NCBI RefSeq assembly: GCF_006345805.1
Contig: NC_043005.1
Span: 19,530,001-19,594,000, forward strand
Origin: Octopus sinensis
Lineage: Eukaryota
Direction of reading: 5' to 3'
DNA: 64,000 nucleotides
The notes beneath the pieces were generated by a model. That model made no database searches, was not told where the DNA came from, and saw only the letters and a list, made by a program, of their open reading frames with translations. Shown piece by piece: positions 5,338 through 60,089 of the stretch. Numbering within the stretch: the stretch's first letter is position 1; each line of letters opens with the position of its first letter. The translations under genes and the position numbers were made by a program.

Positions 5338-5958
5338 TATATTCCAACCGATGTCTACTTCTCTTCTGTTTCTTTGTAATCCTAGTTCACCACTTCCTGT
5401 TTCCGTTCTGACTATTTTTCTGACTTATTTTCCAGCTCGTTTAGCCAGCACACCTATCTTTCTCTTCTCCATTGTTTGCTCAAGAACATCGTCTAGCACT
5501 TAAAGCGCCTTTTCTTTCTTTCTCTCCGATTGCTCCAGTTGCTTTATTGTTTTATGTTGTTTCGTTTTCTTTTATTTATATAAAAAAAAATCTTGTTTTA
5601 TTTAATTTTATCGTAAATAAATACATAATATTTTCTTCTTTTCTATTCACTAGCCTCGACAATATATCCGTTTCATGTTTTGTTGCTAAGATTCGACTCC
5701 ATTTTTTCCTTATTTGTTTCCGACATGCCTTCAATGCATCTTTCTCACAACCGTATCCAATGGTTGTTGATAGCCTTAGGGGACGTTCAAGTGTCGAAAC
5801 GGTTTTAAATCGGAGTGAGACAGCTTATGGTCGTTTCATTTTGGCTTATTTTTGTCTTCTGTAATTATCATCATGCGCTTTTATAGTTTGTGTCCTTTGC
5901 TTGTATTTTCGATTGACCACGAACACAGACATATTGTCAAATATGTTTGTTTTATACA

Positions 5959-6892
5959 TGCATGCATGCATGCATGCATACATACACTCATACATACATA
6001 CATACATACATACATACATACATACATACATACATACATACATACATACATACACATACATACATACATACATACATACATACATACATACATACATACA
6101 TACATACATACATCATACATACATACATACATACATACATACATACATACATACATACATACATACATACATACATACATACATGTATACATACATACAT
6201 ACATACATACATACATACATACATACATGTATACATACATACATACATACATACATACATAACATACATACATACTACATACATACATACATACATACAT
6301 ACATACATACATACATAACATACATACATACATACATACATACATACATCATACATACATACATGTATACATACATACATACATACATCATACATACATA
6401 CATACACTCATACATACATACATACATACATACATACATACATACATACATACATACATACATACATACATACATGTATACATACACACATACATGTATA
6501 CATACATACATACATACATACATACATACATACATACATACGTACATACATACATACATACATACATACATACATACATACATACATACATACATACATA
6601 CATACATACATACATACATACGTACATACATACATACATACATACATACATACATACATACATACATACATACATACATACATACATACATACATACATA
6701 CGTACATACATACATACGTACATACATACACATACATACATACATACATACATACATACATACATACATACATACATACATACATACACATACATACATA
6801 CATACATACATACATACATACATACATACATACATACATACATACATACATACATACATACATACATACATACATACATACATACATACATA
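5959..6892. repeat. (CATA)n microsatellite, ~930 bp
   Basis: Directly visible; source of the spurious HTYI/MYVC ORFs. Confidence 0.99.
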
Positions 6893-8084: not shown

Positions 8085-8480
8085 GAGTCGGCCGCAGTAT
8101 TTGACTAGTACCATTTTATCGACTCTGTAAGAGCAAAAGGCAAAGATGACCCCGGTTGGACTTGAAATCAAAGTGCAGAGAGTCGAAACAAACAGTGCAA
8201 ACTATTCTAACTTACTGCATAACAAGGCGGCGAGCTGGCAGAATCGTTAGCACGCCGGGCGAAATGCGTAGCCGTATTTCGTCTGCCGTTACGTTCTGAG
8301 TCCAAATTCCGCGGAGGTCGACTTTGCCTTTCATCCTTTCGGGGTCGATAAATTAAGTACCAGTTGTGTACTGGGGTTGATCTAATCGACTGGCCCCCTC
8401 CCCAAAAATGTCGGGCCTTGTGCCTAGAATAGAAAAGAGCTTAGTGCATAACGACGCTGTCAATGTGCCACCCACCTTAT
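8085..8480 (-). mobile_element. Old family A SINE interrupted by a younger copy
   Basis: Degenerate reverse-strand body 8095-8210 continues after 8452. Confidence 0.55.
8223..8439 (+). mobile_element. tRNA-derived SINE, family A (young, nested)
   Basis: Complete A/B boxes and tail; TSD ttactgcataac (8211-8222) / ttagtgcataac (8441-8452). Confidence 0.92.
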
Positions 8481-14424: not shown

Positions 14425-14796
14425 AAGCTCTCAAATTCCTGGAAGTATATCCTAATTTCTTGTGAATATACCCGTACTTCATGTAAATATACTTCAAGTT
14501 CTTGTGGAATATACAGCATGTTCTTTGGAATAATTCCCCAAATTATTAACAAAATTGTAGATATATCTATACAGACGCAGAGTCTTTCTTGAATACAGAC
14601 AGGCAGAAATGGGTGAGTTGAATGTAGAATGTAAAGACACAATATCAAATGCTGTCATAAATTTAGTCTGGCACTCCACCTGCCTTAGTAGTTTGTTTCT
14701 AGTCATTGGTAAATTCGGAGAAATGTCCTTAGCACTACAGACCCACTTAACAGATGACAATTGTAATTATGGCTTTTATCAAAGAGTACAACAGGG

Positions 14797-14940
14797 ATCA
14801 CTACCAACCCCTGTCGGAGCTTCGTGGAGCTTTTAGGTGCTTTCGCTCAAATAAACACACACAACGCCCGGTCTGGGAATCGAAACCGCGATCCTCCGAC
14901 CGCAAGTCCGCTGCCCTAACCACTGGACCATTGCGATCCT
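14797..14940 (-). mobile_element. tRNA-derived SINE, family B (head only)
   Basis: Reverse complement of gcaatggtccagtggttagggcagcggact..gatcgcggtttcgattccc. Confidence 0.85.
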
Positions 14941-15124
14941 ATTTCCATCTGCCAGGATAAAGCGCTAAAGACAGAAACGCTAAGGTTTTATTCTTCCAGA
15001 CACTTATTTAAATTCCCATATTTACTCATGGAATACTTGTTGACGACGGATAGAGAAATACCAGTTTGCTTCGAACATTAATAATGTTTGTTTTATATTA
15101 TAAGCCACAGGGTCTTAAGTCCGA

Positions 15125-18041: not shown

Positions 18042-21000
18042 GGTGAACACCGGGGACGTTTAAGATGTAAGAAGGAAAATTCAGAGCTCCGAAATCTATC
18101 CACAAACATCGAAAACAAGGACATCCTATGGAGCCAAAGTTTTACTAACAAAGAATTGGACTGTATCCGAGTAAGTAATACTAATTGAAATTTATTACTA
18201 TTTTCGAAACGAAATGATGTATTTTGACTCGATATCATCTCCGCCTCTAACGCAACACATGTAAACATGCGTGGAACATCACGATCATCTCCGACCCCAA
18301 ACACCATGTACAAAGGAACTACGAAGAAATTAAATGCCACCGATACTATTCAACCCAAGAATAACAATCGAGCGGTACGTACATTAAACTTACAACAAAA
18401 AATGTACGGAAAACTACACGTGCGAAATAATGTGACAACAGAAATAAACGGACCGGTACCCTACGAAAATGACGACCGTCAAAATAATGGGCCGGACGTT
18501 GTACCTCATGTCCCGCAAATAAAACCCAAAAGACGTAAATGGACACGTGAGGAATACATTTCTATCTTACACGCATACTTCACAGCAGTACTCTACCCAA
18601 AAAATGAAAATACAACACATACATATAAAATATGGAAGGAAAATAATAGAGATATAGACTTGGATACAGCAATGAACCCTAATAAATTAGCTAACGTACG
18701 AAGATACATTCTCAACACAAAAAAATATCAGAAATAGAAATAGAACACCTAAAAGAAAACATACACCAGGAAAATGTAGATAGAAGCCACACAACAATGC
18801 CCAATAATATAAACACTGAAACTGTAAAACACGAAGACAAACGCAACATTCCCAACAAACACGATGTAAACAACGAAGGGGAGCCTAATGATTATGATAA
18901 TATAAAAAATAAAATAATCAAAGAACTGAAAACCACAGAGCTCAAGAATCAAAATAAACAAAATAACAACACCTATTATAAACAGCATAAACCTAGCCGT
19001 CACTGAACTGATAGCCACTGAATAAAAAAAAAGTGATATCACTGAGCTAAATAACCTAATATACGCAGCAGCCACTGCAGCCACAAAAGAAGCTGGATAC
19101 TCACCCAAACCCGCCCAAACAGGAGTACCACCACCCAAACAAACCCTGTGGATAAATAACATCCAAAGCAAAATAAAAAAAATTAGAAAAGACCTGTCGA
19201 TTCTTAATGAAATCAGCAAACAATCAACGCTACTGAGCAACAAAAAGAGAACAAAAATACTCCGCAAATATAACATCACAGAGAAAGACTTGCCTGAAAT
19301 AAAAGAAAAGCTGAAGCAAGATATCCTTGCCAAAGCACAAAGGATCCGCCGGTACAAGAAACGCCAACGCTTCTTTGAAGAAAACAAAAAGTTCAACTCC
19401 AACCCCAAAAAGTTCTACCAAGAACTGGGAAAAAATAAAATAGAAGTCACTGCAGCACCAACGGCAGAAGAATTGGAAGAATTCTGGGGAGAAATATGGT
19501 CGGCGAACGAACCACCAAAAAAAAGGAGTATCAAAACAACAAACTCGGCATCTGAACAACTTTGGACCACCATAACAACTGAAGAGGTCACCCAGGCACT
19601 GCAAAGACTAAGCAACTGGAAGGCACCTGGGCATGACAAGATCCCCAACTTCTGGTTGAAATATCTAACAGGAATGCACAAAAAGCTGGCTGAAAACTTT
19701 AACAACGTACTAGCAGAGCCAGAGACAATGCCTGAATGGCTCACGAAGGGGAAAACCATCTTAATTCCAAATCAAATGAAACAGAAAAACCAGAAAACTA
19801 CAGACCAATAACCTGCCTCCCTACTATGTTCAAGGCATTTACTGCAGTGATATCACAAAGGCTGAACAAGCACCTGGACGAAAACAAACTGTTCCCAGAA
19901 GAGCAGAAAGGATGCCGCAAAGGCTCATATGGCTGTAAAGATCAACTAATGATTAATAAAGCCATAACTGAAGACAGCCACAGAGAGAAGAAAGGCCTCA
20001 GTATGGCCTGGATTGACTACAAAAAGGCGTTTGATAGCATCCCCCACACATGGATCCTCGAAACACTAGCCATTAACAAAGTAGCACCAACAATCATAAA
20101 ATTCATAGAGCACTCTGTGAATAAATGGCAAACAGTCCTACACCTCCAAACAAAAGAGGGACTCATGAAAACCAAAGACATCCCCATTAGAAGAGGAATA
20201 TTCCAGGGAGACACGCTCTCTCCACTCCTTTTCTGCTTGGCACTGTCACCTCTATCTGATATGCTAAATAGAACTGGATGCGGATATAAATGTTACGGCA
20301 AAACGATCAGCCACCTTTTATATATGGATGACCTAAAACTATACGCTGCAAATGACAAACAGCTGGAAACACTATTAAAGACAGTTCATGGATTTACCAA
20401 AGAAATAGATATGAAATTTGGATTAGAAAAATGCGCCAAAGTAACCCTGAAAAGAGGAAAACTAGTTAAGAGTAACAACGTCACACTAGATAAAACCAAT
20501 GAAATAAAAGAATTAGACCAAAGCCAAACTTACAAATACTTAGGAATCCATGAACTAGATAAGACACAACACACACAAATGAAAGAGAAAATAAAAAAAG
20601 AATATTATAGACGAGTTAGATCAATACTAAACACAGAGCTCAATGCTAAAAACAAGATAATAGGTATCAACACTTTAGCTGTCCCAGTTATAAGTTACAG
20701 CTACAATATCCTTAACTGGACACGAAATGAACTGACCAAAATAGATAGGAAAACAAGAAAAATAATGACAGGATCTAGGATGCATCACCCAAAATCTGAC
20801 ATAGAAAGACTATATATACAACGTATAGAAGGTGGTAGAGGCCTTATACAGCTGGAAAACTACTATAAAATAACCACCATAGGACTGCAAAAATATCTAC
20901 TTCAGAATGAAGGAAAACTGATCCAGATAGCGGCAAAACACGAGCAAAACAAAAAGCTGTTCTCAGTATTTAAGGAAGCTGACAAATACAAACAAGAAAT

Positions 21001-21979
21001 CATACCACCTAATAAACATGAAGAAGAAGAAGAAGAAGAAGATGAAGAAACAACAAAAGCTATAAAACAAATGAAATCCAAACTAAAAATAGAACAGCAA
21101 CGAACCATGATAAAACGATGGCAAGAAAAGCCCCTTCATGGTAAATACTGGACTAAACTAAACGCAAAAGAAATAGACAAAGAAAAATCCCAGCAATGGT
21201 TGAGAAGCTCAGGATTGAAAGCAGAAACAGAGGGATTTTTAATTGCAGCACAAGACCAAAGCCTCCCCACCAGAAATTACCAAAAACCTGTAATGAAAAG
21301 AAATATAACAAGTAACTGCAGAATATGTGGAGATAGACAAGAAACAATAAATCATATTATCTCTGGCTGCCCAGTCCTGGCTAAGAAGGAATATATTCAC
21401 AGACATGACAGAGTTGGAACCTACATACACTGGAAGCTATGCCAACATTATGGAATAACAACAGAAAAAAGATGGTATAGGCACACACCAGAAAAGGTCA
21501 CAGAAAACGAGAAAGCAACCATACTCTGGGATATGCCGATACACACAGATAGAGAAATTAAGGCCAACAGACCAGATATAGTTGTCAGAGATCATGAAGA
21601 AAAAAATGCTTTCTAATTGATGTATTAATACCGGCTGATGACAACGTGTCTCTAAAAGAAATGGAGAAACTCTCAAAATACAAAGACCTGGAAATAGAGG
21701 TAACTAGAATGTGGAATCTGAAAACAGAAACAATTCCTATCATAGTAGGTGCATTAGGCATGATAAAAAAATATTCAGACAAATACATAACAAAAACACC
21801 AGGACTTACAAACACATATAACATACAGAAAATTGCACTACTAGGCACTGCACACATCCTACGCAGAACACTTTCCATACAATAACCATCAGAGCATCAC
21901 AACAAATCACAGCACATACCCAAGGCACACAGAGCTGTGCTCGGTAGTGAAGTGAAAGCACGCTATAAAAATAAAACTA

Positions 21980-22072: not shown

Positions 22073-23190
22073 CTAGCTTACAAAACAACCACAATTGGCA
22101 TCAAGGAAAGCAAAAAATTTGCTATTGATCTCGTGCAGGATACCCAAACTGAACAACCCGAGGGAAGTACGGCAACTATTGTTGCAAAGAAGGTGAAAAT
22201 GATGGCAATGAAAAAAGCGCACGAGCAATTGGCTGATAGGTGGGAGGAGAAACCTCTGCACGGCAAATATGTGACCCGCAGCAAACAAGCTGATGTTGAC
22301 CAGAAGCAAACCCATCAGTGGCTGCGGAGCTCAGGGCTAAAAGCAGAGAGCGAAGGTTTCATCCTGGCTGCTCAAGACCAAAGCCTATCAACCCGGAACT
22401 ACCAGGCCAATGTGATGAAAAATGGAGCAGACCCAAAATGCCGATTCTGCAACGACATGATTGAAACAGTGGACCACCTAATCTCTGGATGTAAAGTCTT
22501 AGCACCAGTGGAGTATAAATTAAGACATGACAGAGTTGGCCAATATCTCCACTGGCTAATAAGTCGGCATTACAATATCAAAACTGCCGACAAGTGGTAT
22601 AATCACCACCCTGAGGCTGTAACTGAAGGAGAAAATGTAACCATTCTGTGGGACTTTCCAGTACATACAGACCGAACCATCAAGGCCAATAAACCAGATA
22701 TTGTTGTGAAAGACCAAAACAATAAAGTTTGCTTATTGATCGACATGAGCATCCCCTGTGATCATAATATCTCAGCGAAAGAGTTTGACAAGCTCAGAAA
22801 ATATAAAGACCTACTCATTGAAATTGAGAAAATGTGGCATCTCAAGGCGGTTACAATACCAGTGATCGTAGGAGCACTAGGAATGATCAAGAAGGGAACC
22901 GAAAATTATCTGAGAATGATCCCTGGCTTACCATCCCTGCAAGAAGTGCAAAAGATTGTCTTAACTGGTACATCACACGTATTGAGAAGAGCATTGTCGA
23001 TGTGAGAACTGTTGCTGCTCATGTATTTTAATGTAACAAAAAAAAAAAAAAAAAAAAATGAACGAACTACTGAGTTTGGTTTAATGGCCTACCAATGAAT
23101 ACTATGAGTTTCTTTGCCCTAGGAGTCGGGAAGACACTCGGCAAGAAATGGAAGAAAATTTGAAAGAAGAAAAAAAAAAAATAAAAAAAA
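22071..23190 (+). mobile_element. 5'-truncated R4/Dong-like element (nest member 3); intact 290-aa C-terminal ORF 22133-23005
   Basis: WEEKPLHG, WLRSSGLKAESEGFILAAQDQ, CRFC..HLISGC, RHDRV, ANKPDIVV, KYKDL, IPVIVGALG; ends in A-rich tract and (AAT)n 23191-23220. Confidence 0.92.
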
Positions 23191-27245: not shown

Positions 27246-29250
27246 TATTTCATTTCATTTGCCATAGAGGCAGCACAAAGATGGGTGGAGGCGCAATGGC
27301 CCAGTGGTTAGGGCAGCGGACTCGCGGTCGTAGGATCGCGGTTGGTTTAGATTCCCAGACCGGGCGTTGTGAGTGTTTATTGAGCGAAAACACCTAAAGC
27401 TCCACGAGGCTCAGGCAGGGATGGTGGTGATCCCTGCTGTACTCTTTCACCACAACTTTCTCTTACTCTTACTTCCTGTTTCTGTTGTACCTGTATTTCA
27501 AAGGGCCGGTCTTGTCACTCTCTGTGTCACGCTGAATATCCCCGAGAACTGCGTTAAGGGTACACGTGTCTGTGGAGTGCTCAGCCACTTACACGTTAAT
27601 TTCACGAGCAGGCTGTTCCGTTGATCGGATCAACCGGAACCCTCGTCGTCGTAACCGACGGAGTGCTTCCACACACACCACACAAAGATGGGTAGCTTTG
27701 CGGGTTGGACATAGACATTAATGAGGCGGATGATTATGATTAAAAAATAATAAAGAAGAGAGAAGGCAGAAAGCGCCCGCCGACTCTCTGCTTCTCTAAA
27801 ACATTGTTCTTTAAAAATGCATATACAGAGGTATTAACCTTCTTACAATTTAAGATACAATATATTTGGACTAAAAAGTCCATACAATTATAAATTACAA
27901 TTTATACACAAATTAGAGGCGATAAACCTCTACAATTCTTTCCCGAGTAAATTTCTTGCAACTTGCAAGCATTGCTGCCACCGAAATCTGGGACTCCAAA
28001 ACAGGATTCTATAATTCTTGTTTTTACACGAGTCAATTATCAGATCACAATACTTTCCTTCCAGCACCAGGGCATTCACCTGCGAAGGACACTCAGGGCT
28101 GTCAATATAATTCGGTTCCCTCAGGACCCGACTATCCATATAATTCTCCACGAAACTGTCAAAAGCTCTTCCCCTGAGATAGCAGAACATACATTCTTCA
28201 CCACCTTCACTGGAAGGGGCCTCAACTCCTTCATTCGGAAGCACACATCCCACTGACGAGGTCATCTTCGTCCCCCCTCCGGTGGCGCACATACCACCGA
28301 AGGGGTTTCGGGCTATTCCGTCACCGGCAATGGCCCGTTTTTTCTTTTTTCTCTTCTTTTTTTTCCTTTTACGACGGGAAGGTGGAGTTCCTTCGACATC
28401 TCCGGAGGACCCTCCCTCGCCCCCGCCGTCTCAGGATTCATCGGTGGGCAACCAGTGTTGTCCCTCTTCTTTCTTTTCTTCCCCTTTGTTTTCGAGGAGG
28501 TTACCCCCTCCTCAACTTTTTCCTCTACTGGGGGAGCAGGGAACACCTCTTCAATTAATTGTTCCAGGACCTTTGCTTGGTCCCGGCAACAGTTCTTCCT
28601 TATGTGGCCCGATTCCTGGCACAAGTGACACTTGAGGGTGGGGTGTCCCTCAACCATCGCCGGGTACCTGGAACCGGCCATTATTTAAAAATCTGGTAAA
28701 TCCAGATCATCGGCTGATTGAGTCCATAGGGTCAAAATTGCTTTTGTCCCGACCCAATCAACCGCAGGCAACATTTTAACATTTAAGAGCTTGGCAGGGC
28801 CGCCACCCAGGCCCCGAAGGATAGTGTCTTCTATCCCTTCGGCCTCTATATCGGGTGGCAGCTCGCACACCCAGGCTCTTGTCAACCCTCTACCGCCATA
28901 AGTAGGGAGAAACAAAATTTTCTCCCCCTCCAAAGGCGTGTTCGCAAAATTACGAGCTTCCGCAGGAGTGTTAAAAAGTACACACACAGTTTCACACTTC
29001 ACACCCCTGCGGATAAACTTAACAGTTGGAGATAGTCTGCCAACTCCTCCTCAATTTCTTCCTCAGAGAAGACTTTGATGGTGTCAAGAACCCTAGAATA
29101 AGTCCTTAACATCACCGTTCTCTCCGTATAATTTTTAACCCTTTCTTTGGGGGCCAGAATTTGCCACTCCAAAGCGGATTTCACCGGTGCCATGTTGATA
29201 GCCAAAACAGGAAAAGTCTACAAACAAAAATCAAAATGTTCAAATGAAAG
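27246..29250 (-). mobile_element. Tx1/L1-like derivative copy 2: frameshifted gag-like ORF1 + APE stub + 3' UTR, no RT
   Basis: ORF1 pieces 28999-29205, 28685-29002, 28313-28681 with CCHC knuckle CHLCQESGHIRKNC; APE-like EGKYCDLIID..YRILFWSP in 27930-28292. Confidence 0.75.
27287..27680 (+). mobile_element. tRNA-derived SINE, family B (full length)
   Basis: ggaggcgcaatggcccagtggttagggc head; tail gtcgtaaccgacggagtgc; 13-bp TSD cacaaagatgggt (27274-27286, 27681-27693). Confidence 0.95.
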
Positions 29251-30793: not shown

Positions 30794-32226
30794 TCACTAA
30801 AAGTGACCAAACAGTACAATGAATACCAGCATTGCTAGAAATAGGAGCCAAAGACTCCTTAGCCACAAAATGTCACGTTCTATTTGGAGTGACAGGGGAA
30901 ACAACATCTCCCCACCGTGAGCGAGCTGCATTAGATTGACATGTTAATTTTGTATAAGAAATTAATACTCGTCAGAGTAATGCTTACTCCATCACCACCC
31001 GTGATGGAGTAAGCATAAATCTGAAGAAATTACGAGTTTTAGCAAAGCAGAAAAAAATTTATGCAACGATATGAGATTCCTACATCAGGAAAAGTTAAAA
31101 ACAATGACGGAAAGTAATGGTGCTTTGTGATTGAATCCCTTGTAATATTTCCTCTGCACCAAATTATAAACGCATCCTCGATACTCTCACAATCAGAAAA
31201 GCAGTGAGTGGCCTGTTATATACCTCCAATCAACGATGCAATTGTTCACAAACAGTGATGTCAAATATGTGATTGTTGACCTAATCAGTTGGGTAATGAG
31301 TCATGACTTTGTCTCACTATAAGGTCGAACTCGGTACCAGAAAATATTTAGCAAAAATCTCATTTATTCACTATTGCTGCTGCTGCTGCTGGTGGTGGTG
31401 GTGGTGGTGTGGAGAGGTTGTTTAGCCATATTAATCTTGATTAAAGATCTTGTGATCAAAAGTGTTCCAGCCAAAACGATTTCCCAGAAAATGCCTGGGA
31501 CTACATTATTCAATAGATGCTACAATATGTACTACAATATGTACTGTCCCAGTACCTGTAGGCTTCATATTATAATACATGGTCTACCAAGAGTCCCACA
31601 CTGACCCATTTACTAAGGGCAATAAACAAAAGGATTATTCCATCTTCAGCTAACCAGATCAGCTTTTCTAAAAGATATTTTCAGCAGCTTAACCTTTAAA
31701 AAGGTTGATCAGCATATACCAAAATAGGTAATCGATTAAAATTGTTTCTTAATCACATTTTCTCGAATGTGCTAAGGAAAGATGCGACCGAACACATTAT
31801 TTGGTCTGGGGAGAGCAACCCATTACTCCCTTTGCCGCAATCTTCTGCTGTTTAATTACTCTCTTTTGTTTCATTTTCTTTGTTAACCTGGCGAGAGTTT
31901 TTTCTTGATAATTTCATCTGTTATACATTTAATGTTTTTTTTTCATGTAAATATATCTATCTATATATATATGTAAAAGTGAGTTTGTGTGTGTGTGTTC
32001 TGTGTGTAAACCCGCGTAATTTCTGATTTTCTCCAAACTGGGAACATACATTACTTCTGTTCCAGAGATTGTTTTAGACCCTTAAATTTTTTCACAATGA
32101 GTAATGGGCCTCTGGGTGCAGAAAATACCCTTTCCTGGGTTACGTTGTGAAGGAAGGCAACTCTATTGTCACCCTTATATTCATTGGTAATAAAATTATC
32201 AGAATCTCAATTGGCTGTGTGAAAGA

Positions 32227-32900
32227 GTGATACAGGCTCCGAAAAACAGCACTGTAAGTAAAATTAATGAGCAGCTACTGCAGTACCGTCCTGGAAGTCC
32301 TTTCATCTATAAGTCAGTTGATACAATCCCAGACCCAGAAGAGGTGATAAATCATCCAACAGAATTTCTCAGTTCATCAGAGCCTCCAGGACCACCTCCC
32401 CACAGACTGGAACTTATATTGGGTACTCCAGTAATGTTATTGAAGAATTTAGATCCATCAACACCCTGCAGTGGAACACGCCTGGTAGTAAAGAAGATGA
32501 TACCACATGTTATTGAGGTCACCATTTTCTCTGGATGTAGAAAAGGAGAGGATGTTTCCATACCCAGATTTCCTCTCATTCCATTGGGAGCAGAAATTCC
32601 TTTTTCGTTCAGAAGAGTGTAATTTCTTATTCGTATCAGCTTCGCAATGTCTATCAATATATCCCAGGGTCAAACACTGTCTGTGGTAGGACTTCACTTG
32701 GAAGAATTTTGCTTCTCATACGGGCAATATGTTGGCTAAAGTGGGAAGCAAAAACAATTATATTTGCATTTGTTCCACAAGGGAAAACACCAAGAGGTTT
32801 TGTAGGAACTATATCTTATGATGTGGTCCAGTATCCACCCCTCTTTGTGAATGGGGAAGATGGATACCACTTCGGCATAATACCAACAAAGCCAAAGACT
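32227..32900 (+). mobile_element. Helitron RepHel fragments (PIF1 helicase C-terminus plus an N-terminal-region piece)
   Basis: PPHRLELILGTPVMLLKNL..CSGTRLVV, RV*FLIRISFAMSINISQGQTL..CFSYGQ; then SYDVVQYPPLFVNGEDGYHF. Confidence 0.9.
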
Positions 32901-34145: not shown

Positions 34146-35014
34146 AAAAGGTTACGTCTAAATGCAACGGGGAGGAGTTTCGTGACCGTCGGGATGTTGA
34201 CAGCGAGGAGGGTGACGAAGAGGCACCGAAGGAGAACGTTGTCATAACTCTCATGCAAAAAGAGCGCAGCCAGACACTTCTGCGGATTTTAAAGTCAAGG
34301 AGGAACAAGGCAGGGAAGAATTTTAAATTTGGAGCAAATGTGCAAAACGGGTTGACCAGAGATTTAAATCCTGGTAAAATTAAAAATACATCTCTAGTTG
34401 AGTAAACACTGCTTGGCCACCTGCAGTGATATCCAGTGTGTGTGTATATTACATTTTATAATAATATATATATGACAGAGGTGTTTAAACCCTCTAAGGG
34501 AGAGATGTATACTCCCAGTAATTATGATCCTTGTTATAAGGTAGACAGCAGCAGGTGTTTTAAAAGGTAAACCATATATTTTCTAAGCAATGTCCAAGTC
34601 TCTATTTGTTTATTCAGCCAGCAAGGAAGTCATAAAAACAAGAAACCATCCAAACTTGTGGTAAGCAACATTTATTAAAATAAAAGTATTCAGAACACAG
34701 AATAACATGTAACAAAAACAATTTGCAAACATATTTACATATGTAACTATACACATCTGTGTGTGTATGTATATATGTATATATCTAGGCTTTATTTTGA
34801 GATTACCAATATTCGCAAATAAAATACAGACAGGAGTTTTAGTGCACCAAGATAAGAGAAAAAAATCTATCAGAAAGGAACTCTATCTCTCTTAAAAAAA
34901 TATCTTTTGATAAGCATAACAAATGCGCAACCGGTAAAAAGAACTTTCACCTAATTAAATACACTCTCCCTTACTTAAATTATTTTGTCAGCATTTTCTT
35001 CATTTCCTTTTTTT

Positions 35015-35106
35015 ATATATATATATACATATATAGATATATATATATACATATATATAATATATATATATATACTATATATATATACATATACATATAT
35101 ATATAC

Positions 35107-35137
<31 letters not shown>

Positions 35138-35346
35138 CATATACATATATATATATACATATATATATATACATATATATATACATATCATATATATAAT
35201 ACCTATATATATAATAACATATACATATATTACATATACATATATATACATATATATATATAATACATATACATATATACATATACATATATATATATAT
35301 AATATATACATATATATATATATATCATATAATATATATACATATA

Positions 35347-35377
<31 letters not shown>

Positions 35378-35439
35378 CATATACTATATATATACATATA
35401 TATATACATATAATATACATATATATACATATATATATC

Positions 35440-35472
<33 letters not shown>

Positions 35473-35565
35473 CATATATATATACATATATATATATATA
35501 CATATATATATACATATATATATACTATATACATATATATATATTATATATACATATATATATAC

Positions 35566-35596
<31 letters not shown>

Positions 35597-35604
35597 ATAT
35601 ATAC

Positions 35605-35653
<49 letters not shown>

Positions 35654-36065
35654 TATATACATATAATATATATATATACATATACATATATAATAACATA
35701 TATATATATACATATATTATATATACATATATAATATATACCATATATATATATACATATATATATATATACATATATTATATATATACATATATATATA
35801 TATTATACATATATATGTACATATATACATATATATACACATATATATATATATACATATATATGTACATATATACATATATATACACATATATAATATA
35901 TACATAATATATACATATATACATATACATATATATATATACATATACATATACATATATATATTACTATATATATGTACATATATATATACATATTATA
36001 TATATATATATATATATAATATATATATATATATATACTATATATATATAATATACATACATATA
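35015..36065. repeat. Complex (TA)/(TACA) microsatellite
   Basis: Directly visible. Confidence 0.98.
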
Positions 36066-36929
36066 TTAATAAATGAAAGAATGGAGTCGAACGAAGATTT
36101 TAACAAAATTCCTTTACTCTCAACACATGTTTTGAAGACTGCATACTCTTAATTCCGAAGGAAAAAAGGGTGCATTATGCTGTCTTCTCATCAGGAAAGA
36201 CAAGGAACCTCTATCAGCCTCAAGACGAACAAAAACTTTTTTATGACTGCCTACAAGGTGTCCACAGTGATAATGAGCGTTTTTTCATAAATCCGTTATA
36301 AGCAATGACGTCAAAATTGGTTGGAAGGACGAAGTTCTGAAAATAAGAAGGGGACTGAATGTATGCTGTATGTATGGGGATGCGCGGGTGTTTGCTCTTG
36401 CTAATGAGTTTGATTGTTTATGTGTGTGTATGAGTGTGTGTATATAACTGTATTTGTGTCTATGTGTGTGTGGTGGGGACAATTGTCAAATATATTTAGT
36501 TGTGGGGTGACAAATTTGTGTCTGTGTGTTTGATTGAGCGTATGATAGAGAGAGATACAGGGAGAGGTAGAGAGGAAGAGATAAACATATGCCAGTGATA
36601 TTTAGTATTAGTGTTTCATGTAACGGAGTAGACATAAAAGAATTTGTTTATGTCAGTGGTGTAGACGTGAAACTAATTATTAAAACCAAAGAGGTTATCT
36701 ATATTATTTATCATTCATATGAGTGGTAAGTGTTTTTTTGCCAATGCTTACATTTATAGGATTTTTCCATTAATGTGTTAACCAAGGGGAACTTGGCGAA
36801 AAGTATATAGAAGAGTTCGGAATTACAAATGCCACAATATTTCCTGCCCTTATCAAAAGGAAAGGATACAGACAATATGGACCAATCCAGCTTGAAAGTT
36901 ATATTGTTGTCCTTAAGACGCCAAACTAA

Positions 36930-37615
36930 TTATATATACACATATATATATATACATATACGTATATACATATATATATATACATATACATATATATATA
37001 TACATATACATATATACATATATATATATACATATATATATATACATATACATATATACATATATATATATACATATATATATACACATATATACATATA
37101 CATATATACCATATATATACACATATATATATACACATATATATATACACACATATATATGCACATATATATACACATATATATACCAATATATATACAC
37201 ATATATATACAACATAATATATACATATATATATACACATAATATAAACAATATATATACATATATATATATACACATATATATATATATACATACATAT
37301 ACACATATAGATATACATATATATACATTACACATATATATAATATATACATATACATATATACATATATATATACTATAACATACATATATACATATAT
37401 ATATATACATTATATATATACAATATATATATATACATATATATAATACATATATATACATATAATACATATATAATACATATATATACATATATATATA
37501 TACATATATATATATACATATATAATACATATATACATAATATATATATACATATATATATACATATAAACATATATATATATGCATATACACATATATA
37601 TATACACATATATAT

Positions 37616-37670
<55 letters not shown>
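36930..37670. repeat. Complex (TA)/(TACA) microsatellite
   Basis: Directly visible. Confidence 0.98.
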
Positions 37671-39060: not shown

Positions 39061-39874
39061 GTAAGATACAAATAAGATAACAAACCCATGGCTGTTTGTT
39101 GACAATTTTTTTCTGCATTGTAATGGTAATTCACCCAGTTTCTGCTGTTCTAATGGCATCTCGGTATTTGAATATAAATGATCTTATTTGTATCTAGCAA
39201 TACTCATTTTGGCACTTATAAAAATCAAATGTTAGTTTGTTCATATTTGTATACACATGGTTATATATACATATACAGTGGCGGACTGGGTTTAAAAATA
39301 TTGGTTGCCAGGAGACTAAGGGGGCCCACCCACAACTACAATGCTATCATTTGATTTTTTTTTATATTGATAATTTCAGCTTGTAGTAAATATATACTAC
39401 CCTTTTTTATTCAGTGCTTTTATTTTTGATTTTTACACTGTAACAATATCCATCATTATCATGAACATCCACACCTGTGTTCTATAATGGTATGTTACCC
39501 TGCCTAATGCCAAATACTTGACAGTATATTGGGTGTTTTTTTTTTTATCATAGCAGCTCTAGGTTGCTCACTACAAAGCTTTCAAAACCCTTCAACAAAG
39601 AAGAGGTGCAGTATTGAGAGACATAGTTATGTGCCAGGTGTTGAAAGGCTAGTGTATGATAGAAGGACAGGAATATGCATACCTGTGTATTTATGTGTGG
39701 GGAGTGTTTGATGTACACATAGTCAAATAAATACCTGAAGCAATTTATTTAATTAACTGCACCCCTCATCCCAAAAGTGTAGCATTGTGCCAAAGCTAGA
39801 AATCCATAGCATATTACTCATTTACATATTACTCACCTCTCCATCATAAATCCTTTGTTAATCTCTTAGTTCCA

Positions 39875-41668
39875 TCAAATTTTACAAGCCACAAGGAATA
39901 TTTCCCTCTCAGTCAACTCTAGAATGTACCAAGATGGAAAAATTTGGTGAAGCCAACTGGTTCCAACTGGTAAGAACATATCTAAATTACAATGAAGGAA
40001 TTTAAAAAATTTCTGCAAACTGTGTAGTTGTTCTGAGAGTATCTGTTGATCGAATTCTTTCTGTTCACAGAGGACACTGATCAGAGCAGAGAGATTACTT
40101 CCAATAACTTTCCCAAAAAATAATTTACCAAAATTTTCATCTTTTGATAATGTAAGCAGAAAGTCTCGGATATATCCAGAATGACTCACTACAGTTTTGC
40201 ACTGAACACCTCCATTTTGAAACTGAGAACATTCAAATGCATTTATTACTGCCTCCATGAAAAATTTGTCTGGTGTTAAAATGATACTTTCAGAAGTTTG
40301 TGTAATATATTTAGAGATGTTAGACTTGACAGAGATATTGTGGACCTGAGTAAGATGCCATTTCATATGGAACTGTATTGAATGACACAAGGAACATATG
40401 CGGCAGCCATACTTCATTTCAGTTTTGTTATAACTGCTTATATCACAATAGAATTTCTGCTTCCATTTGGGTAATTCTGAATGGAAGTTACTCATGTGTG
40501 TCTTAATTTGATGAAAGATTGCTTCACAGTAAGGTACAGGACACTTTACCAAATAGTTTGACTCTGAGAGAATCATTCTTGATCTTTCTTCAGTTTCAAA
40601 AATTTTGTTTGGCATTTCATGCCTGCTTGAAGTAGAATATGGTGTTATCAACAGAGTTTCATTAGTTCTTTCAAATCCATTCTGTGAATCAGAGAAATCC
40701 AAATCCGTGCCTTCATTTTTAATTGCTGATAGAGATTTAAGTTCATTTTCATCAAATAACTGTTTAAAATTATTTAACAATCCATTAGAAGTTTTGGGAT
40801 CTGGAGAAGATATTCTTTGAAACTTTGACCTAAAGTGACTATGTTTGGAAGAATTAGCAGTTAATCCATAAATGCTTTTATCATTATCTGTTTCTGTTTT
40901 CAAATCTGAAATCAAATGTTGATTCATGTTCAAATCTTGTTGCTTAGAAGATTGAGAATAGTAATAATCACTTGAAGAGTCCAATATGTATGTATGGGAA
41001 TCTGATGAATCTAAGCAGCTAGAAAATGTAATCTGCTTCACAATTTCACTATCCAAATCCGTTTTACAGAAGTTGGAATTTAAATGAAAGTCTTGTTCAT
41101 ATAATGTGATAGCATTTCTCGGGAGTGTCTTGAATGTTACAACTATGTCATCTTTAAAACATTTATAATTTCTCTGAATAAAATTCTGACCAAATTCATT
41201 AGTGGTAAATGCTTTATCCCACTGTCTCTCACAGTTTAAATTTCTTCTCTTTAATTCTTGCATTTTGACAAACTTTCCTGCAACTACAGAATCATTATAA
41301 AATGTCTTGTTGTCTTCAGGGCATAATAAAGAGTTGGAATCTATAGGATTAATGCTGTATTCTCTATTTTCTGAATCTGGAATAACAGTGATTTTATAAT
41401 GACATTTACTATCCTTGAAGAATGTTTGTTTTCTATAAGAAATTGATTTCTCTTTAATTCCATAGGAAATGCCCGGTATAAAGCTGTCAGTGCTGAGATG
41501 TTCAAATTCTTGATGATTACTGTTACAATAGTGATGACAGACATAAGAGATGTATTCTTTCCAATCAAGTGAATTATATTCCTGGATAAAGCTCAAAGGT
41601 ATGCTGATTTCAAAAGTAACTCCATTTTCTAAGAATTTTAAATATTTCTTCATTCCTGAAAGAGCCAT
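39875..41668 (-). CDS. 597-aa protein with two atypical C2H2 zinc fingers and a helical C-terminus resembling a tyrosine-recombinase core-binding domain
   Basis: Uninterrupted 1.8-kb ORF in repeat-free DNA; context gaagaaATGG; CPVPYC-x9-H-x4-H (40481-40543) and CSLC-x9-H-x4-H (within 40340-40405); acceptor ctcttttctttcctaacAG ends 41710; donor AG|GTGAGT at 39837/39836. Confidence 0.75.
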   Translation of the reverse strand: MALSGMKKYLKFLENGVTFEISIPLSFIQEYNSLDWKEYISYVCHHYCNSNHQEFEHLSTDSFIPGISYGIKEKSISYRKQTFFKDSKCHYKITVIPDSENREYSINPIDSNSLLCPEDNKTFYNDSVVAGKFVKMQELKRRNLNCERQWDKAFTTNEFGQNFIQRNYKCFKDDIVVTFKTLPRNAITLYEQDFHLNSNFCKTDLDSEIVKQITFSSCLDSSDSHTYILDSSSDYYYSQSSKQQDLNMNQHLISDLKTETDNDKSIYGLTANSSKHSHFRSKFQRISSPDPKTSNGLLNNFKQLFDENELKSLSAIKNEGTDLDFSDSQNGFERTNETLLITPYSTSSRHEMPNKIFETEERSRMILSESNYLVKCPVPYCEAIFHQIKTHMSNFHSELPKWKQKFYCDISSYNKTEMKYGCRICSLCHSIQFHMKWHLTQVHNISVKSNISKYITQTSESIILTPDKFFMEAVINAFECSQFQNGGVQCKTVVSHSGYIRDFLLTLSKDENFGKLFFGKVIGSNLSALISVLCEQKEFDQQILSEQLHSLQKFFKFLHCNLDMFLPVGTSWLHQIFPSWYILELTEREIFLVACKI

Positions 41669-42562
41669 TTCTTCTCATGGAATAATATCAATCACATGGA
41701 AACATCTTTCTGTTAGGAAAGAAAAGAGTATGTTTATTTTTCTTTATCAAAATATTATTATTGTTAATATATCTACTAAAACAAGAGAGATAAATACTTT
41801 TAAATAAAATTTCAAAAATAGAAAGATATGTTAAAATTAAAACAGTTTAAAAATACATTTCAATTAAGCAATTAATAAAACATATATTTTTAAGCTGAAG
41901 TACAAACAGGAGTGGCAGTGAGGTCAAATTTGGTGCTTGACTTGTAAACCCATAGCTACATGCTCAAACCTTACCTCAGTCAGTGAGTTATCTGTTTGAC
42001 TGACATTGGGCTCCATTTCAGCTTCATAATATAATAAATTAATACTACAATTTGTCTAATCTATCCTACAAGTGCTAAATTATTTAATATAGTGAGCTTT
42101 AAATAATTAATTTGAAATATATATGGAAAATAAAGACATCATTAACTCTATGACTGATATTTTATTTTATTATTTTAATTAATTACAAAGAAAAATAAGG
42201 GGGAATAACACTGATAGTCTCAGTCCTATTAAACCTAATCAGAGAAGTACTGATTTCACCAGAGTAGTAGTTCTGAGAGAATCATTCAGAAATCATGCAT
42301 TCATTTTTACATCGAAGTTTTCCATGTTAACATGAGTGAGAGTAATACATTATCGAAGCATTGTTTTAGAAATGGATGCCTTTCCTGTCACCAACTGTTG
42401 CTTGTTTTTCAAGTAAGGGGTATCTTGATTCACATGTCTTTAAAGATGCGAAAACAGCAGATGACACAATGGCATCACAACCCTTAGCTGAGCAATTTTA
42501 GGGGAACCTGAAATGTAAACAAATACAGATACATACCTACGTTCACACACTTGCATACATCG

Positions 42563-42921
42563 TGGCACTCCGTCGGTTACGAGGACGTGGGTTCCAATTG
42601 ATCCAATAAGCGGAACAGCCTGCTCGTGAAATTAACATGCATGTGGCTGAGCACTCCACAGACACGTGTACCCTCAACATAGTTCTCGGGGAGATTCAGC
42701 ATGACACAGAGTGTGACAAGGCTGGCCCTTTTGAAATACAGGTACAACAGAAGCAGGAAGAAAAAGAGAAAGTTGTGAAAGAATACAGCAGGGTTCGCCA
42801 CCAACCCCTGCCGGAGCCTTAGGTGTTTTCTCTCACTAAACACAACGACCGGTTTGGGAATCGAAACTGCGATCCTACAAACGCAAGTCCGCTGCCCTAA
42901 CCACTGGGCCGTTGCGCTTCT
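42563..42921 (-). mobile_element. tRNA-derived SINE, family B
   Basis: Reverse-complement full copy (gcactccgtcggttacga..ctgccctaaccactgggcc). Confidence 0.92.
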
Positions 42922-43540: not shown

Positions 43541-43972
43541 GGATCTTTTCGGTTTGACTGGCAGTTTTTTCTAACGGTGTCATATGAAATTGTCACCTAT
43601 AATTATGACCCTAGTATCGATCTATTGCATTTCAATCTGTTTTAGGGTTAGGGTTAGTTAGGGTTAGGATTAGGGGTGGGGGGAAGGGTATCTTTTTTTC
43701 TTCACAAATGTAAATAAACCCAATCGGTTTCTTAAACGATGGACATATTCATACGGCACAGAATGCTTTTTAACTCAATAGACGTCAGTGATTGGTTGAA
43801 ATTGCAGAAATTGAAGAAAAAAAACAACAAATATCTTACAAACAATAGAATTTTCTCAATAAAGCCAAGAGAAAAAGATGTTTTATAAACACATTCTACC
43901 AGTATACGAAGTTTTAAATTTTTAGTTACCTAGAAATTATGTTAAAAACTGCCGTTCAAAACGAAAAGATTC
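43541..43972. mobile_element. Merlin-type MITE, copy 2 (inverted relative to copy 1)
   Basis: Same TIR; 8-bp TSD catttaac / catttaat. Confidence 0.85.
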
Positions 43973-45060: not shown

Positions 45061-45190
45061 ACATTAATATCAAAACTATCCTCACTTCACTCCCCTGACA
45101 AGTAAAAGCCTCAACCTCCAACTCTTTGTGGCTGTCTCTGCTTTACCATAAATCATATATGTCATTGTGTGTACATGCATATGTATGAGA

Positions 45191-45574
45191 GTGGAGGCGC
45201 AATGGCCCAGTGGTTAGGGCAGTGGACTCGCGGTCATAGGATCGCGGTTTCGATTCCCAGACCAGGCGTTGTGAGTGTTTATTGAGCGAAAACACATAAA
45301 TCTCCACGAGGCTCCGGCAGGGGATGGTGGTGATCCCTGCTGTACTCTTTCACCACAACTTTCTCTCACTCTTACTTCCTGTTTCTGTTGTACCTGTATT
45401 TGAAAGGGCCGCCCTTGTCACTCTCTGTGTCACGCTGAATATCCCCGAGAACTATGTTAAGGGTACACGTGTCTGTAGAGTGCTCAGCCACTTACACGTT
45501 AATTTCACGAGCAGGCTGTTCCGTTGATTCGGATCAACCGGAACCCTCGTCGTCGTAACCGACGGAGTGCTTCC
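45191..45574 (+). mobile_element. tRNA-derived SINE, family B
   Basis: Full copy; 10-bp TSD atgtatgaga (45181-45190, 45575-45584). Confidence 0.95.
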
Positions 45575-46254
45575 ATGTATGAGAAAAGCTTCGTTGAATG
45601 ACGATTCTAAACTCTTCAATTAATAAAATGTAATTACTAAGCCACAACACTACTGAGGCATAGAAGACTGGAAACGTTCTTTTATGTGACCAGGAATCAC
45701 AGAATAAGGGATAATGGCAGCAATAATTCCTTTTAAGTTGTGTTCATGGTTACACGTTGTTATGAAGATTACAGTCGGTTAAATATTTCAGTTACCCCCG
45801 TGGTATTTTTTACTAGGAATTTAAATATCTAAATACCGCGAAGTATCTTATCTGGCGGTCCACTTGTGTATGCTTATGATCCACAGCTGATATTAATAAA
45901 TTTATTAATGATATTAGTGCACAGTGAGAAAAATATAAATTTCTCTATGGACTTACTACGATTACTGCTTAGAACGTAATAATCTCCCTTGCAACTATTC
46001 AGGGGAAGTAACTCTCGGAGAAACCGATTTGGCTGACGTTATTTTGATTGACGAAACAATTTACTGGTAAGAGAAGGGAAAACTAATAGTTTAAATTAAA
46101 CCTAATATACTACATTATTTATTTATACATCCAAGAATATTGACATCATCACTGTGGCTGGAAGTTATTATAAGGCAACTTAATGAAATACACAATCAAA
46201 ACAGTCTTTTCAGTATTCTTTTGTTCCAGCGGCCCGTGTATTGATTTAAAATTT

Positions 46255-52502: not shown

Positions 52503-53099
52503 AGACAGACGAAATACCTATTTCTTTACTACCCACAAGGGGCTAAACACAGAGAGGACAAACAAGGACAGACAAACGGATTAAGTCGATTACAGTGCGT
52601 TACTGGTACTTAATTTATCGACCCCGAAAGGATGAAAAGCAAAGTCGGCCTCGACGGAATTTGAACTCAGAACGTAACGGCGGACGAAATACCAATTTCT
52701 TTACTATCCACAAGGGGTTAAACACAGAGGGGACAAACAAGGACAGACAAACGGATTAAGTCGATTATATCAACCCCAGTGAGTAACTGGTACTTATTTA
52801 ATCGACCCCGAAAGGATGAAAGGCAAAGTCGACCTCGACGGAATTTGAACTCAGAACGTAACGGCGGACGAAATACCTATTTCTTTACTATCCACAAGGG
52901 GTTAAACACAGAGGGGACAAACAAGGACAGACAAACGGATTAAGTCGATTATATCGACCCCAGTGAGTAACTGGTACTTATTTAATCGACCCCGAAAGGA
53001 TGAAAGGCAAAGTCAACCTCGGCAGAATTTGAACTCAAAACTTAACGGCAGACGAAATACCGCTAAGCATTTCGCCCGGCGTGCCAAATCGCCACCTTA
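52503..53099 (-). mobile_element. Tandem array of family A SINE units (one with head, two headless)
   Basis: gacgaaatacc recurs at 52508, 52683, 52867, 53051 (~175-184 bp period). Confidence 0.9.
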
Positions 53100-59736: not shown

Positions 59737-60089
59737 ACTAGCGGGACCCGTGAATATTTCACGGAATTAATGGTAAGCCTATTGGGTTATTTTTGAAAAC
59801 TTTATCCAAAAAACCTGGAATTAATGGTAAGCCTATTGGGTTATTTTTGAAAACTTTATCCAAAAAACCTGGAATTAATGGTAAGCCTATTGGGTTATTT
59901 TTGAAAACTTTATCCAAAAAACCTGGAATTAATGGTAAGCCTATTGGGTTATTTTTGAAAACTTTATCCAAAAAACCTGAAAGCGTAACCCGTGTTGTGT
60001 CAGTACGAAAAGATAGTCGCTCATTTGTTACTCATTGAAAAGTGAAAGGAACTGGAATACGATGATTGGAATATGTTGATATATACTTG
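59737..60089 (+). mobile_element. Helitron-like non-autonomous element with internal tandem repeat
   Basis: 5' actagcgggacccgtgaatatttcacgg with hairpin 59748-59764, followed by a 54-bp array. Confidence 0.45.
59763..59978. repeat. Four perfect 54-bp tandem repeats
   Basis: Unit ggaattaatggtaagcctattgggttatttttgaaaactttatccaaaaaacct at 59763, 59817, 59871, 59925. Confidence 0.97.

What the first reader, a model, noticed from the sequence alone, without database searches (positions are those of the whole stretch)
39837..41975. Single-exon ORF with two short-spacer C2H2 fingers and a recombinase core-binding-like tail: possible domesticated tyrosine-recombinase element gene
Seen: an intact 597-aa ORF in the only long repeat-free stretch. 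The whole ORF lies in one putative exon (acceptor ending 41710, donor AG|GTGAGT 38 nt after the stop), with an in-frame upstream stop, a strong start context and a possible upstream donor GAG|GTAAGG at 41975/41974. Both fingers use C..C-x9-H-x4-H rather than the usual x12. The tail (AFECSQFQNGGVQCKTVVSHSGYIRDFL..EQLHSLQKFFKFLH) has the T..Y...I..FL and L.SL..FF.FL pattern of the helical core-binding (SAM-like) domain of tyrosine recombinases. Inference: I recall x9 fingers preceding such domains in uncharacterised animal YR-transposon (Crypton-like) proteins. Here the catalytic R-H-R-Y domain is absent, which suggests a DNA-binding-only exapted gene, analogous to vertebrate Crypton-derived genes (ZMYM, KCTD1, ATF7IP).
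Basis: partly seen in the sequence, partly recalled or inferred. Interest (0 to 1): 0.72.

Follow-up and report, generated by a model that had tools for sequence, protein, structure and literature searches.

The report
Conserved orphan zinc-finger gene in octopus
This is a real, single-copy, selectively maintained Octopus sinensis gene for a protein with two unusual short-spacer zinc fingers and a conserved helical tail, but the proposed link to a tyrosine-recombinase transposon rests on one weak similarity and is unproven.

Summary
The 597-aa ORF (window 41668..39875, minus strand) is real and is already annotated as an unnamed protein in O. sinensis and O. vulgaris. It behaves as a host gene. 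It is single-copy and has no transposon ends. Orthologues are intact, dN/dS is 0.44 overall and 0.14 in the tail, and all coding indels are in frame. A distant subfamily (31% identity) keeps both Cx(2,4)C-x9-H-x4-H fingers, a PKWK linker and the tail, and stops at the same residue, so no catalytic exon is hidden.

The recombinase idea is not established. Pfam, PDB, PHROGs, NCBIfam, phage tblastn and HMMER found nothing. AlphaFold models were too poor (pLDDT 39 and 50) for fold comparison. Known Crypton-derived genes keep the catalytic-domain remnant (DUF3504), which is absent here.

The most likely reading is a lineage-restricted zinc-finger nucleic-acid-binding protein of unresolved origin. 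Exon boundaries are untested, and a position-conserved AATAAA after the stop is an alternative to the proposed donor.

The parts
39875..41668 (-). Complete CDS, 597 aa plus TGA stop; exact protein already in NCBI/UniRef for O. sinensis CM016867.1
   Evidence: dN/dS 0.44 vs L001; only two indels, both 3 nt
41081..41194 (-). N-terminal motif FGQNFIQRNYKCFKDD..TLP..LYEQDF (aa 159-196), homologous to a motif repeated five times in P0003/P0006 (RKH.YFNDD..IDKSP...LF..D)
   Evidence: BLASTP matches to three P0003 repeats, E 0.003, 0.008 and 0.12
41324..41443 (-). Possible weaker second copy of the same motif (aa 76-115, ISYRKQTFFKDSK...)
   Evidence: by eye only; no significant alignment
40559..41068 (-). 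Ser/Asp/Asn-rich acidic, hydrophilic middle region (aa 201-370), likely disordered; least constrained part
   Evidence: 18% Ser, pI 5.0, GRAVY -0.93; codons 301-400 dN/dS 1.55 on only 4.5 synonymous differences
40481..40543 (-). Zinc finger 1, Cx4C-x9-H-x4-H (aa 376-396)
   Evidence: all four ligands invariant in five sequences
40460..40471 (-). Invariant PKWK motif in the inter-finger linker (aa 400-403)
   Evidence: invariant columns in A4
40340..40396 (-). Zinc finger 2, Cx2C-x9-H-x4-H (aa 425-443); octopus-only alternative x12 reading from C422
   Evidence: weak resemblance to classical C2H2 fingers of ZNF217/ZFAT, E 0.15
39878..40279 (-). Conserved C-terminal tail (aa 464-597): four predicted long helices then a short beta-hairpin; the most constrained part of the protein
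   Evidence: dN/dS 0.14 at dS 0.30 and 0.11 in the second subfamily; secondary structure from low-confidence AF2 models; weak hhalign match to XerD core-binding domain
39875..39877 (-). Authentic stop codon; position conserved in all lineages (TGA, or TAA in L086)
41669..41865 (-). Highly conserved block directly upstream of the ATG (92-96% identity to L001, above the ORF mean of 90% and distal flanks at 69-84%); contains the acceptor-like AG at 41710 and a TATATTAA; either intron 3' end plus 5'UTR, or core promoter plus 5'UTR
39831..39836 (-). Donor-like GTGAGT 38 nt after the stop; conserved within the octopus clade only
39744..39749 (-). AATAAA polyadenylation-signal candidate 126 nt after the stop; conserved in the octopus clade; the distant clade has AATAAA at +73 in all three loci

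Best explanation
This is a lineage-restricted, single-copy host gene of Octopus sinensis with a CDS in one exon. It has orthologues in O. vulgaris and in a more distant octopus-like species, and a deeply diverged sister subfamily in three unidentified AT-rich genomes. Shown: the ORF is maintained by purifying selection. The conserved core of the family is the C-terminal ~230 aa, made of two CCHH zinc fingers with a shortened C-x3-[F/aliphatic]-x2-[I/L/Y]-x2-H spacer (x9 instead of x12), an invariant PKWK linker, and a ~135-aa mainly helical tail that is the most constrained part and runs to a conserved stop. Inferred mechanism: the basic finger pair (pI 9.0) binds nucleic acid, most likely DNA. 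The helical tail provides a second contact or an oligomerisation/partner-binding surface. The acidic Ser-rich middle and the N-terminal RKH.YF.DD motif (one or two copies here, five in the sister subfamily) act as a flexible effector or partner-recruiting arm. On this reading it is a chromatin or transcription regulator. Its evolutionary origin (de novo, fast-evolving old gene, or capture from a mobile element) is unresolved.
For: The ORF is intact and the same length (597 aa) at 81% aa identity. dN/dS is 0.44 overall and 0.14 in the last ~100 codons at dS 0.30, Fisher p 1.5e-6. The ORF has two indels, both 3 nt, against ten in the flanks of which one is a multiple of three. The second subfamily gives dN/dS 0.37 (tail 0.11, p 1.7e-5) and 0.35 at dS 0.84. 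Allelic variants in several sequencing runs are all intact. There is one copy in the 64-kb window and one per species among 15 billion proteins. The locus is colinear with O. vulgaris over ~20 kb. No terminal repeats bracket it. Finger ligands and PKWK are invariant, and two x9 fingers occur by chance in 1 of 20,000 shuffles. Finger 2 weakly resembles classical C2H2 fingers. The finger region is basic. The gene is annotated in both genomes.
Against: There is no direct evidence of expression, zinc binding or nucleic-acid binding. No known domain model matches. The octopus tail is mildly acidic (pI 5.1-5.9), although it is basic in the sister subfamily. CCHH fingers can also bind RNA or protein. 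dN/dS of about 0.4 is only moderate constraint outside the tail. The taxon of the sister subfamily could not be determined, so the age of the family is unknown.
Confidence: 0.6

Rival explanations
1. One reading: the gene is an exapted remnant of a tyrosine-recombinase (Crypton-like) transposon that kept only the DNA-binding half, namely the zinc fingers plus the SAM-like core-binding domain, and lost the catalytic R-H-R-Y domain.
For: hhalign of the tail against a profile of 79 XerD core-binding domains gives one colinear alignment over three helices in the predicted register: KTV..YIRDFL to NTL.AYRRDL, LHSLQKFFKFLH to LSAVRRLFQYLY, and then the invariant D of N.D.F.P to the post-helix DDP. 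Score 16.7, P 0.026. Only 4/200 column shuffles and 3/200 block shuffles reach it, and the reversed tail scores 9.7. The same region is the only match against full-length XerD. The four-helix prediction fits the length of a core-binding domain. An intronless CDS in a lineage-restricted zinc-finger gene is typical of domesticated TE genes (general knowledge).
Against: HH probability is 1.9% and P rises to 0.096 against full-length XerD, and the hypothesis was chosen after seeing the same pattern. There is no hit to any integrase, SAM-like or DUF3504 model in Pfam, PDB, PHROGs or NCBIfam. tblastn against 50,697 phage genomes finds no integrase. The XerD HMMs do not reach E<10 on the tail, and no catalytic remnant lies downstream or elsewhere in any locus. 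An exhaustive phmmer search of 1.84 billion representatives found no YR-containing relative. Animal Cryptons have no recognizable domain beyond the YR, and known domesticates retain DUF3504 (PMC3212892). Foldseek found no recombinase, though the model was poor.
Confidence: 0.15
2. The fingers are not DNA-binding. The protein is an RNA-binding or purely protein-interaction adaptor, for example a scaffold whose helical tail oligomerises.
For: Non-canonical finger spacing and only two widely spaced fingers (28-aa linker) are poor for classical tandem DNA recognition (general knowledge of C2H2 fingers). The tail is acidic in the octopus clade. A repeated short linear motif in the N-terminus suggests partner binding.
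Against: The finger region is basic. The same x9 spacing is used for DNA binding by prokaryotic Ros/MucR fingers (from memory, not tested here). No evidence distinguishes the ligand.
Confidence: 0.2
3. It is the gene of a low-copy mobile element or an endogenous viral element that is still mobile or was recently mobile (a plain TE).
For: It sits in a repeat-rich region with a LINE RT ORF and a Pif1-like fragment within about 20 kb. It has an intronless CDS.
Against: There is a single copy per genome. The position is orthologous with alignable flanks in three octopus genomes and in L003/L086/L004. No terminal repeats are present. No relatives occur in viral or metagenome contigs. Selection is purifying between species.
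Confidence: 0.03
4. It is a chance or decaying ORF with no function.
For: No known domain, no demonstrated expression, AT-rich genome.
Against: The 597-codon frame is preserved at dS 0.21, with in-frame indels only and dN/dS significantly below 1 in two independent clades. The stop position is conserved across clades.
Confidence: 0.02

Closest known systems
Classical C2H2 (Kruppel/TFIIIA-type) zinc fingers
   Same: CCHH ligand set; Cx2-4C and Hx4H spacings; a hydrophobic residue three positions after the second Cys and another three before the first His; weak profile match of finger 2 to ZNF217/ZFAT fingers (E 0.15).
   Different: The spacer between the second Cys and first His is 9 rather than 12 residues in every family member. 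No Pfam zf-C2H2 hit even at E<=10. There are only two fingers, separated by a 28-aa linker with an invariant PKWK rather than a TGEKP-type linker.
Ros/MucR-type prokaryotic C2H2 fingers (Cx2C-x9-H-x3/4-H)
   Same: The same shortened 9-residue spacer and the same C-x3-F-x2-L-x2-H layout (recalled from the literature, not tested here).
   Different: No match to the Pfam ROS_MUCR model. These are eukaryotic proteins with two fingers. The resemblance is probably convergent.
Core-binding (SAM-like) N-terminal domain of tyrosine recombinases (XerD/XerC/Cre type)
   Same: About 100-aa domain predicted as four helices. Colinear weak hhalign match to XerD residues 17-88 (17-110 against full-length XerD) with matching hydrophobic motifs.
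   Different: Significance is marginal (P 0.026-0.096, HH probability <2%). There is no HMMER, Pfam or PDB signal. No catalytic domain follows; a conserved ~35-aa beta-hairpin and a stop codon follow instead. The octopus tail is acidic, whereas XerD-type domains have median pI 9.4.
Crypton-derived host genes (KCTD1 isoform b, KIAA1958, ZMYM2/3/4, QRICH1, WOC, ATF7IP)
   Same: Single-exon, conserved host genes, often combined with zinc fingers and acting as transcriptional regulators (PMC3212892).
   Different: All of those retain DUF3504, the degenerate catalytic YR domain. This family has none and is restricted to a narrow lineage.

Membership tests
Tyrosine recombinase / Crypton transposon protein | Catalytic domain with the R-H-R-Y tetrad (Phage_integrase / DUF3504 fold) | tested here: not met
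   No Pfam hit at E<=10. A full-length XerD HMM finds nothing in six-frame translations of the window and four related loci. The protein ends at a stop conserved in all lineages.
Tyrosine recombinase / Crypton transposon protein | N-terminal core-binding (SAM-like) four-helix domain | tested here: inconclusive
   hhalign score 16.7, P 0.026, empirical 3-4/200, correct register; P 0.096 against full-length XerD. HMMER, PDB, PHROGs and phage tblastn are negative. AF2 pLDDT of 39-50 makes the Foldseek result uninformative.
Tyrosine recombinase / Crypton transposon protein | Multi-copy, mobile, with element termini | tested here: not met
   Single copy. Orthologous position with alignable flanks. 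No bracketing repeats.
Crypton-derived domesticated genes (DUF3504 genes) | Presence of a DUF3504 domain | tested here: not met
   No DUF3504 hit in Pfam for any of the five members. Definition from PMC3212892.
Classical C2H2 zinc finger (Pfam zf-C2H2) | Cx2-4C-x12-Hx3-5H spacing and a match to the family model | tested here: not met
   The conserved spacing is x9. No Pfam match. Only a sub-threshold resemblance to ZNF217/ZFAT.
Classical C2H2 zinc finger (Pfam zf-C2H2) | Two Cys and two His ligands conserved, zinc coordinated | tested here: inconclusive
   All eight ligand residues are invariant in five sequences. Actual zinc binding is not testable with these tools.
Functional protein-coding host gene | Purifying selection on the reading frame between species | tested here: met
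   dN/dS 0.44, 0.37 and 0.35 in three comparisons, with Fisher p 1.5e-6 and 1.7e-5 for the first two. Indels in the ORF are in frame only.
Functional protein-coding host gene | Transcription and correct splicing or polyadenylation | not testable with these tools
   The Logan contigs are colinear with the genome and end in repeats, so they are probably genomic. The stored annotation holds only CDS ranges.

The most novel reading that the evidence does not exclude
The family is a new type of tyrosine-recombinase domestication. Only the DNA-recognition half of a Crypton-like transposase (x9 zinc fingers plus the core-binding domain) was retained as a host regulator and the catalytic domain was discarded. 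This is the reverse of all known Crypton exaptations, which keep the catalytic-domain remnant.
Probability: 0.12. Interest if true: 0.6.

Novelty: new variant of a known kind. Interest (0 to 1): 0.35.

Why it matters
If the function is confirmed, this would add a lineage-restricted regulator to the cephalopod gene set. It would have a non-canonical (x9) eukaryotic CCHH finger and an unassigned helical domain. Cephalopod-specific genes are of interest for the clade's unusual genome and nervous system. If the recombinase link were confirmed, it would show that the DNA-targeting half of a YR transposase can be exapted on its own. As it stands, this is a well-supported but uncharacterised orphan gene that is already present as a 'hypothetical protein' in two annotations.

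Tried and rejected
(1) Pfam, PDB-sequence, PHROGs and NCBIfam scans of the full protein, the fingers plus tail and the tail alone gave no meaningful family.
(2) A profile search of the 5.8-billion protein set with alignment A1 returned nothing, not even the known orthologues. I treat it as uninformative.
(3) AlphaFold2 on fingers plus tail (pLDDT 38.7) and on the tail alone (49.7) was too poor. Foldseek against PDB gave a best E of 2 to armadillo-type repeats, which I reject as meaningless.
(4) Metagenome and viral contig scans found no relatives.
(5) tblastn of the tail against phage genomes found no integrase hits.
(6) The Crypton paper's supplement contains only catalytic-domain alignments, which are useless for a core-binding test.
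(7) I tried to use L001 as a transcript to test splice junctions. The contig is colinear with the genome through both proposed sites, begins in a dispersed repeat and ends in (CA)n, so it is probably genomic and gives no splice information.
(8) Literature searches for the SRA/ENA accessions, and a shared-repeat search to identify the species behind L001, L003, L086 and L004, found nothing.
(9) Synteny between L004 and the window by tblastx showed only the gene itself matching.
(10) Tail charge as an argument against DNA binding was rejected as indecisive, because the tail is acidic in the octopus clade but basic in the sister clade.
Full report
**The observation**

The window is from Octopus sinensis, assembly GCA_006345805.1, chromosome CM016867.1 (species per PMC10700109). 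The minus strand carries an ATG-to-TGA ORF at 41668..39875 encoding 597 aa.
- an in-frame TGA two codons upstream of the ATG (41677-41675);
- an A(-3)/G(+4) start context;
- a pyrimidine-rich acceptor-like AG ending at 41710;
- GAG|GTGAGT starting 38 nt after the stop;
- GAG|GTAAGG at 41975/41974.

The two fingers are at aa 376-396 (Cx4C-x9-H-x4-H) and aa 425-443 (Cx2C-x9-H-x4-H). Two such motifs occur in 1 of 20,000 shuffles of the protein.

Some minor corrections apply:
- In the octopus clade only, finger 2 also reads as a canonical x12 finger from Cys422.
- The window has another long ORF, a LINE reverse transcriptase at 19736-21616.
- Several other acceptor-like sites exist upstream.
- O. 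vulgaris annotates the CDS from Met6. Met6 is preceded by ctctttcAG, which also looks like an acceptor.

**Is it a gene?**

Yes. The exact protein is already in NCBI/UniRef for O. sinensis. O. vulgaris has a 98%-identical 'hypothetical predicted protein' at a locus colinear over about 20 kb.

A third, unidentified octopus-like species (Logan contig L001) has a 597-aa orthologue at 81% aa identity. Against it:
- dN/dS is 0.44 overall (61 synonymous and 124 non-synonymous differences, Fisher p 1.5e-6);
- in the last ~100 codons dN/dS is 0.14 at dS 0.30, so the low ratio there is not due to low mutation;
- the ORF has only two indels, both 3 nt, whereas about 1 kb of flanks has ten, of which one is a multiple of three.

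Allelic variants from several sequencing runs are all intact. tblastn finds no second copy in the window or in the O. vulgaris locus. No inverted or direct repeats bracket the ORF. An exhaustive phmmer scan of 1.84 billion representative proteins found only this cluster and one distant cluster.

**The wider family**

The distant cluster consists of P0003 (681 aa), P0017 (92% identical to P0003) and P0006 (51% identical to P0003). P0006 lies on a 499-kb ENA contig. These align to the octopus protein only over its last ~250 aa, at 31% identity and E 3.6e-26.

All eight finger ligands, a PKWK motif in the 28-aa inter-finger linker, and many hydrophobic positions of the tail are invariant. Every member terminates at the same residue (…LV[AS]CK[IVT]*):
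- P0006's apparent extension is a gene-calling artefact, with TGA read as Trp;
- L086 uses TAA at the same position.

The stop is therefore authentic and no catalytic exon is hidden behind an assembly error.

This subfamily is also under purifying selection. dN/dS is 0.37 overall and 0.11 in the tail (p 1.7e-5), and 0.35 at dS 0.84 against L004.

The N-termini share a ~35-aa motif (FG.N.I.R[KN][HY]..F.DD…P….L[FY]..D). It is present five times in P0003 and once, or possibly twice, in the octopus protein. Between that region and the fingers lies an acidic, Ser-rich, hydrophilic stretch that is the least constrained part.

I could not identify the organisms behind these contigs. They share no repeats with octopus and are more AT-rich.

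**Testing the recombinase interpretation**

Sequence-to-profile methods find nothing:
- Pfam on all members;
- PDB sequences with single-sequence and profile queries;
- PHROGs and NCBIfam;
- tblastn against 50,697 phage genomes.

The only sub-threshold signal is finger 2 against classical C2H2 fingers of ZNF217/ZFAT (E 0.15).

To test the core-binding idea directly, I fetched E. coli XerD and 80 diverse relatives. I built a profile of the core-binding domain (XerD residues 1-110, 79 sequences) and compared it with the tail alignment by hhalign.

The score is 16.7, P is 0.026 and HH probability is 1.9%. In the empirical nulls:
- 4 of 200 column shuffles and 3 of 200 ten-column block shuffles reach that score;
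- the reversed tail scores 9.7.

Against full-length XerD, the same region is the only match and extends into the post-helix linker, with P 0.096.

Plain HMMER with the same XerD models does not reach E<10 on the tail. It finds no catalytic remnant in six-frame translations of the window, L001, L002, L003 or L004.

AlphaFold2 with the four- or five-sequence alignments gave pLDDT 38.7 and 49.7. The predicted secondary structure is four long helices plus a terminal beta-hairpin. That is compatible with a core-binding domain but also with many other folds. Foldseek on the better model returned only non-significant armadillo-type hits, which is uninformative given the model quality.

From the literature, Kojima & Jurka 2011 state that the only recognizable domain in animal Cryptons is the YR/DUF3504 domain. 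All known domesticates (KCTD1, KIAA1958, ZMYM2-4, QRICH1, WOC, ATF7IP) retain it (PMC3212892). A core-binding-only exaptation would therefore be something new rather than an analogue of these genes.

Overall, the recombinase link is a lead with nominal p of about 0.02. That value is inflated by post-hoc hypothesis choice, and nothing independent corroborates it.

**Gene model**

The roughly 200 nt upstream of the ATG (41865-41669) are 92-96% identical to L001. That is higher than the ORF itself and much higher than more distal sequence. This fits either a conserved intron end plus 5'UTR or a core promoter.

The +38 GTGAGT is conserved within the octopus clade but absent from the distant clade. 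By contrast, an AATAAA is position-conserved in each clade: +122 to +129 in the octopus clade, and +73 in L003, L086 and L004. Only transcript data can decide.

**Conclusion**

The finding is a real, conserved, already-annotated but uncharacterised gene. Its most likely product is a zinc-finger nucleic-acid-binding regulator with a strongly constrained helical C-terminal domain of unknown fold. The transposon-domestication story is possible (about 0.12-0.15) but unproven. Interest is moderate to low.

Noticed in passing
window 19736-21616 (+) and 22133-23005 (+): 626-aa ORF with RVT_1 (E 1.9e-32) and zf-RVT domains, followed by a 290-aa ORF with zf-RVT. This is a non-LTR retrotransposon copy (or two) in a strongly A-skewed stretch (AT skew 0.39-0.42 at 18-22 kb).
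   Followed up: partly
window ~31236-32622 (+): The O. sinensis annotation has a 158-aa product with a Pif1_2B helicase domain here, about 7-8.6 kb downstream of the finding. It may be a Helitron or Pif1-like fragment.
   Followed up: no
window 43642-43673: Short interstitial telomere-like repeat, (TTAGGG)n of about five units.
   Followed up: no
window 42561-42921: A 361-nt segment present in O. sinensis and O. vulgaris but absent from the L001 orthologous locus, with a 14-nt overlap at the junction (possible target-site duplication). It contains a ~150-nt dispersed repeat with other copies near 14781-14941, 27281-27666 and 45166-45581, so it is probably a lineage-specific SINE-like insertion.
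   Followed up: partly
window 59763-59979: Perfect (100% identical) four-copy tandem repeat of a 54-nt unit.
   Followed up: no
window 52508-53061: A 184-nt unit repeated 3.1 times in tandem. The unit belongs to a dispersed family with many copies in the window (for example near 1186-1408, 4051-4215, 8226-8391).
   Followed up: no
window 5954-6892, 35014-36066, 36931-37668: Very long microsatellites ((ATAC)x237 and (TA)n arrays of 0.7-1 kb) that generate most of the spurious long ORFs in the six-frame list.
   Followed up: no
L003 3735-3757; L086 and L004 equivalent: Logan contig L003 ends 17 nt after the clade-conserved AATAAA at +73, as a polyadenylated transcript would, while L086 runs on. 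L003 may derive from RNA-seq, which would be expression evidence for the sister subfamily.
   Followed up: no
L004 10001-12208: P0006 was predicted with TGA read as Trp (a metagenome gene caller). This gives false N- and C-terminal extensions. Under the standard code the protein starts at MNNSNK and stops after LVSCKT.
   Followed up: yes
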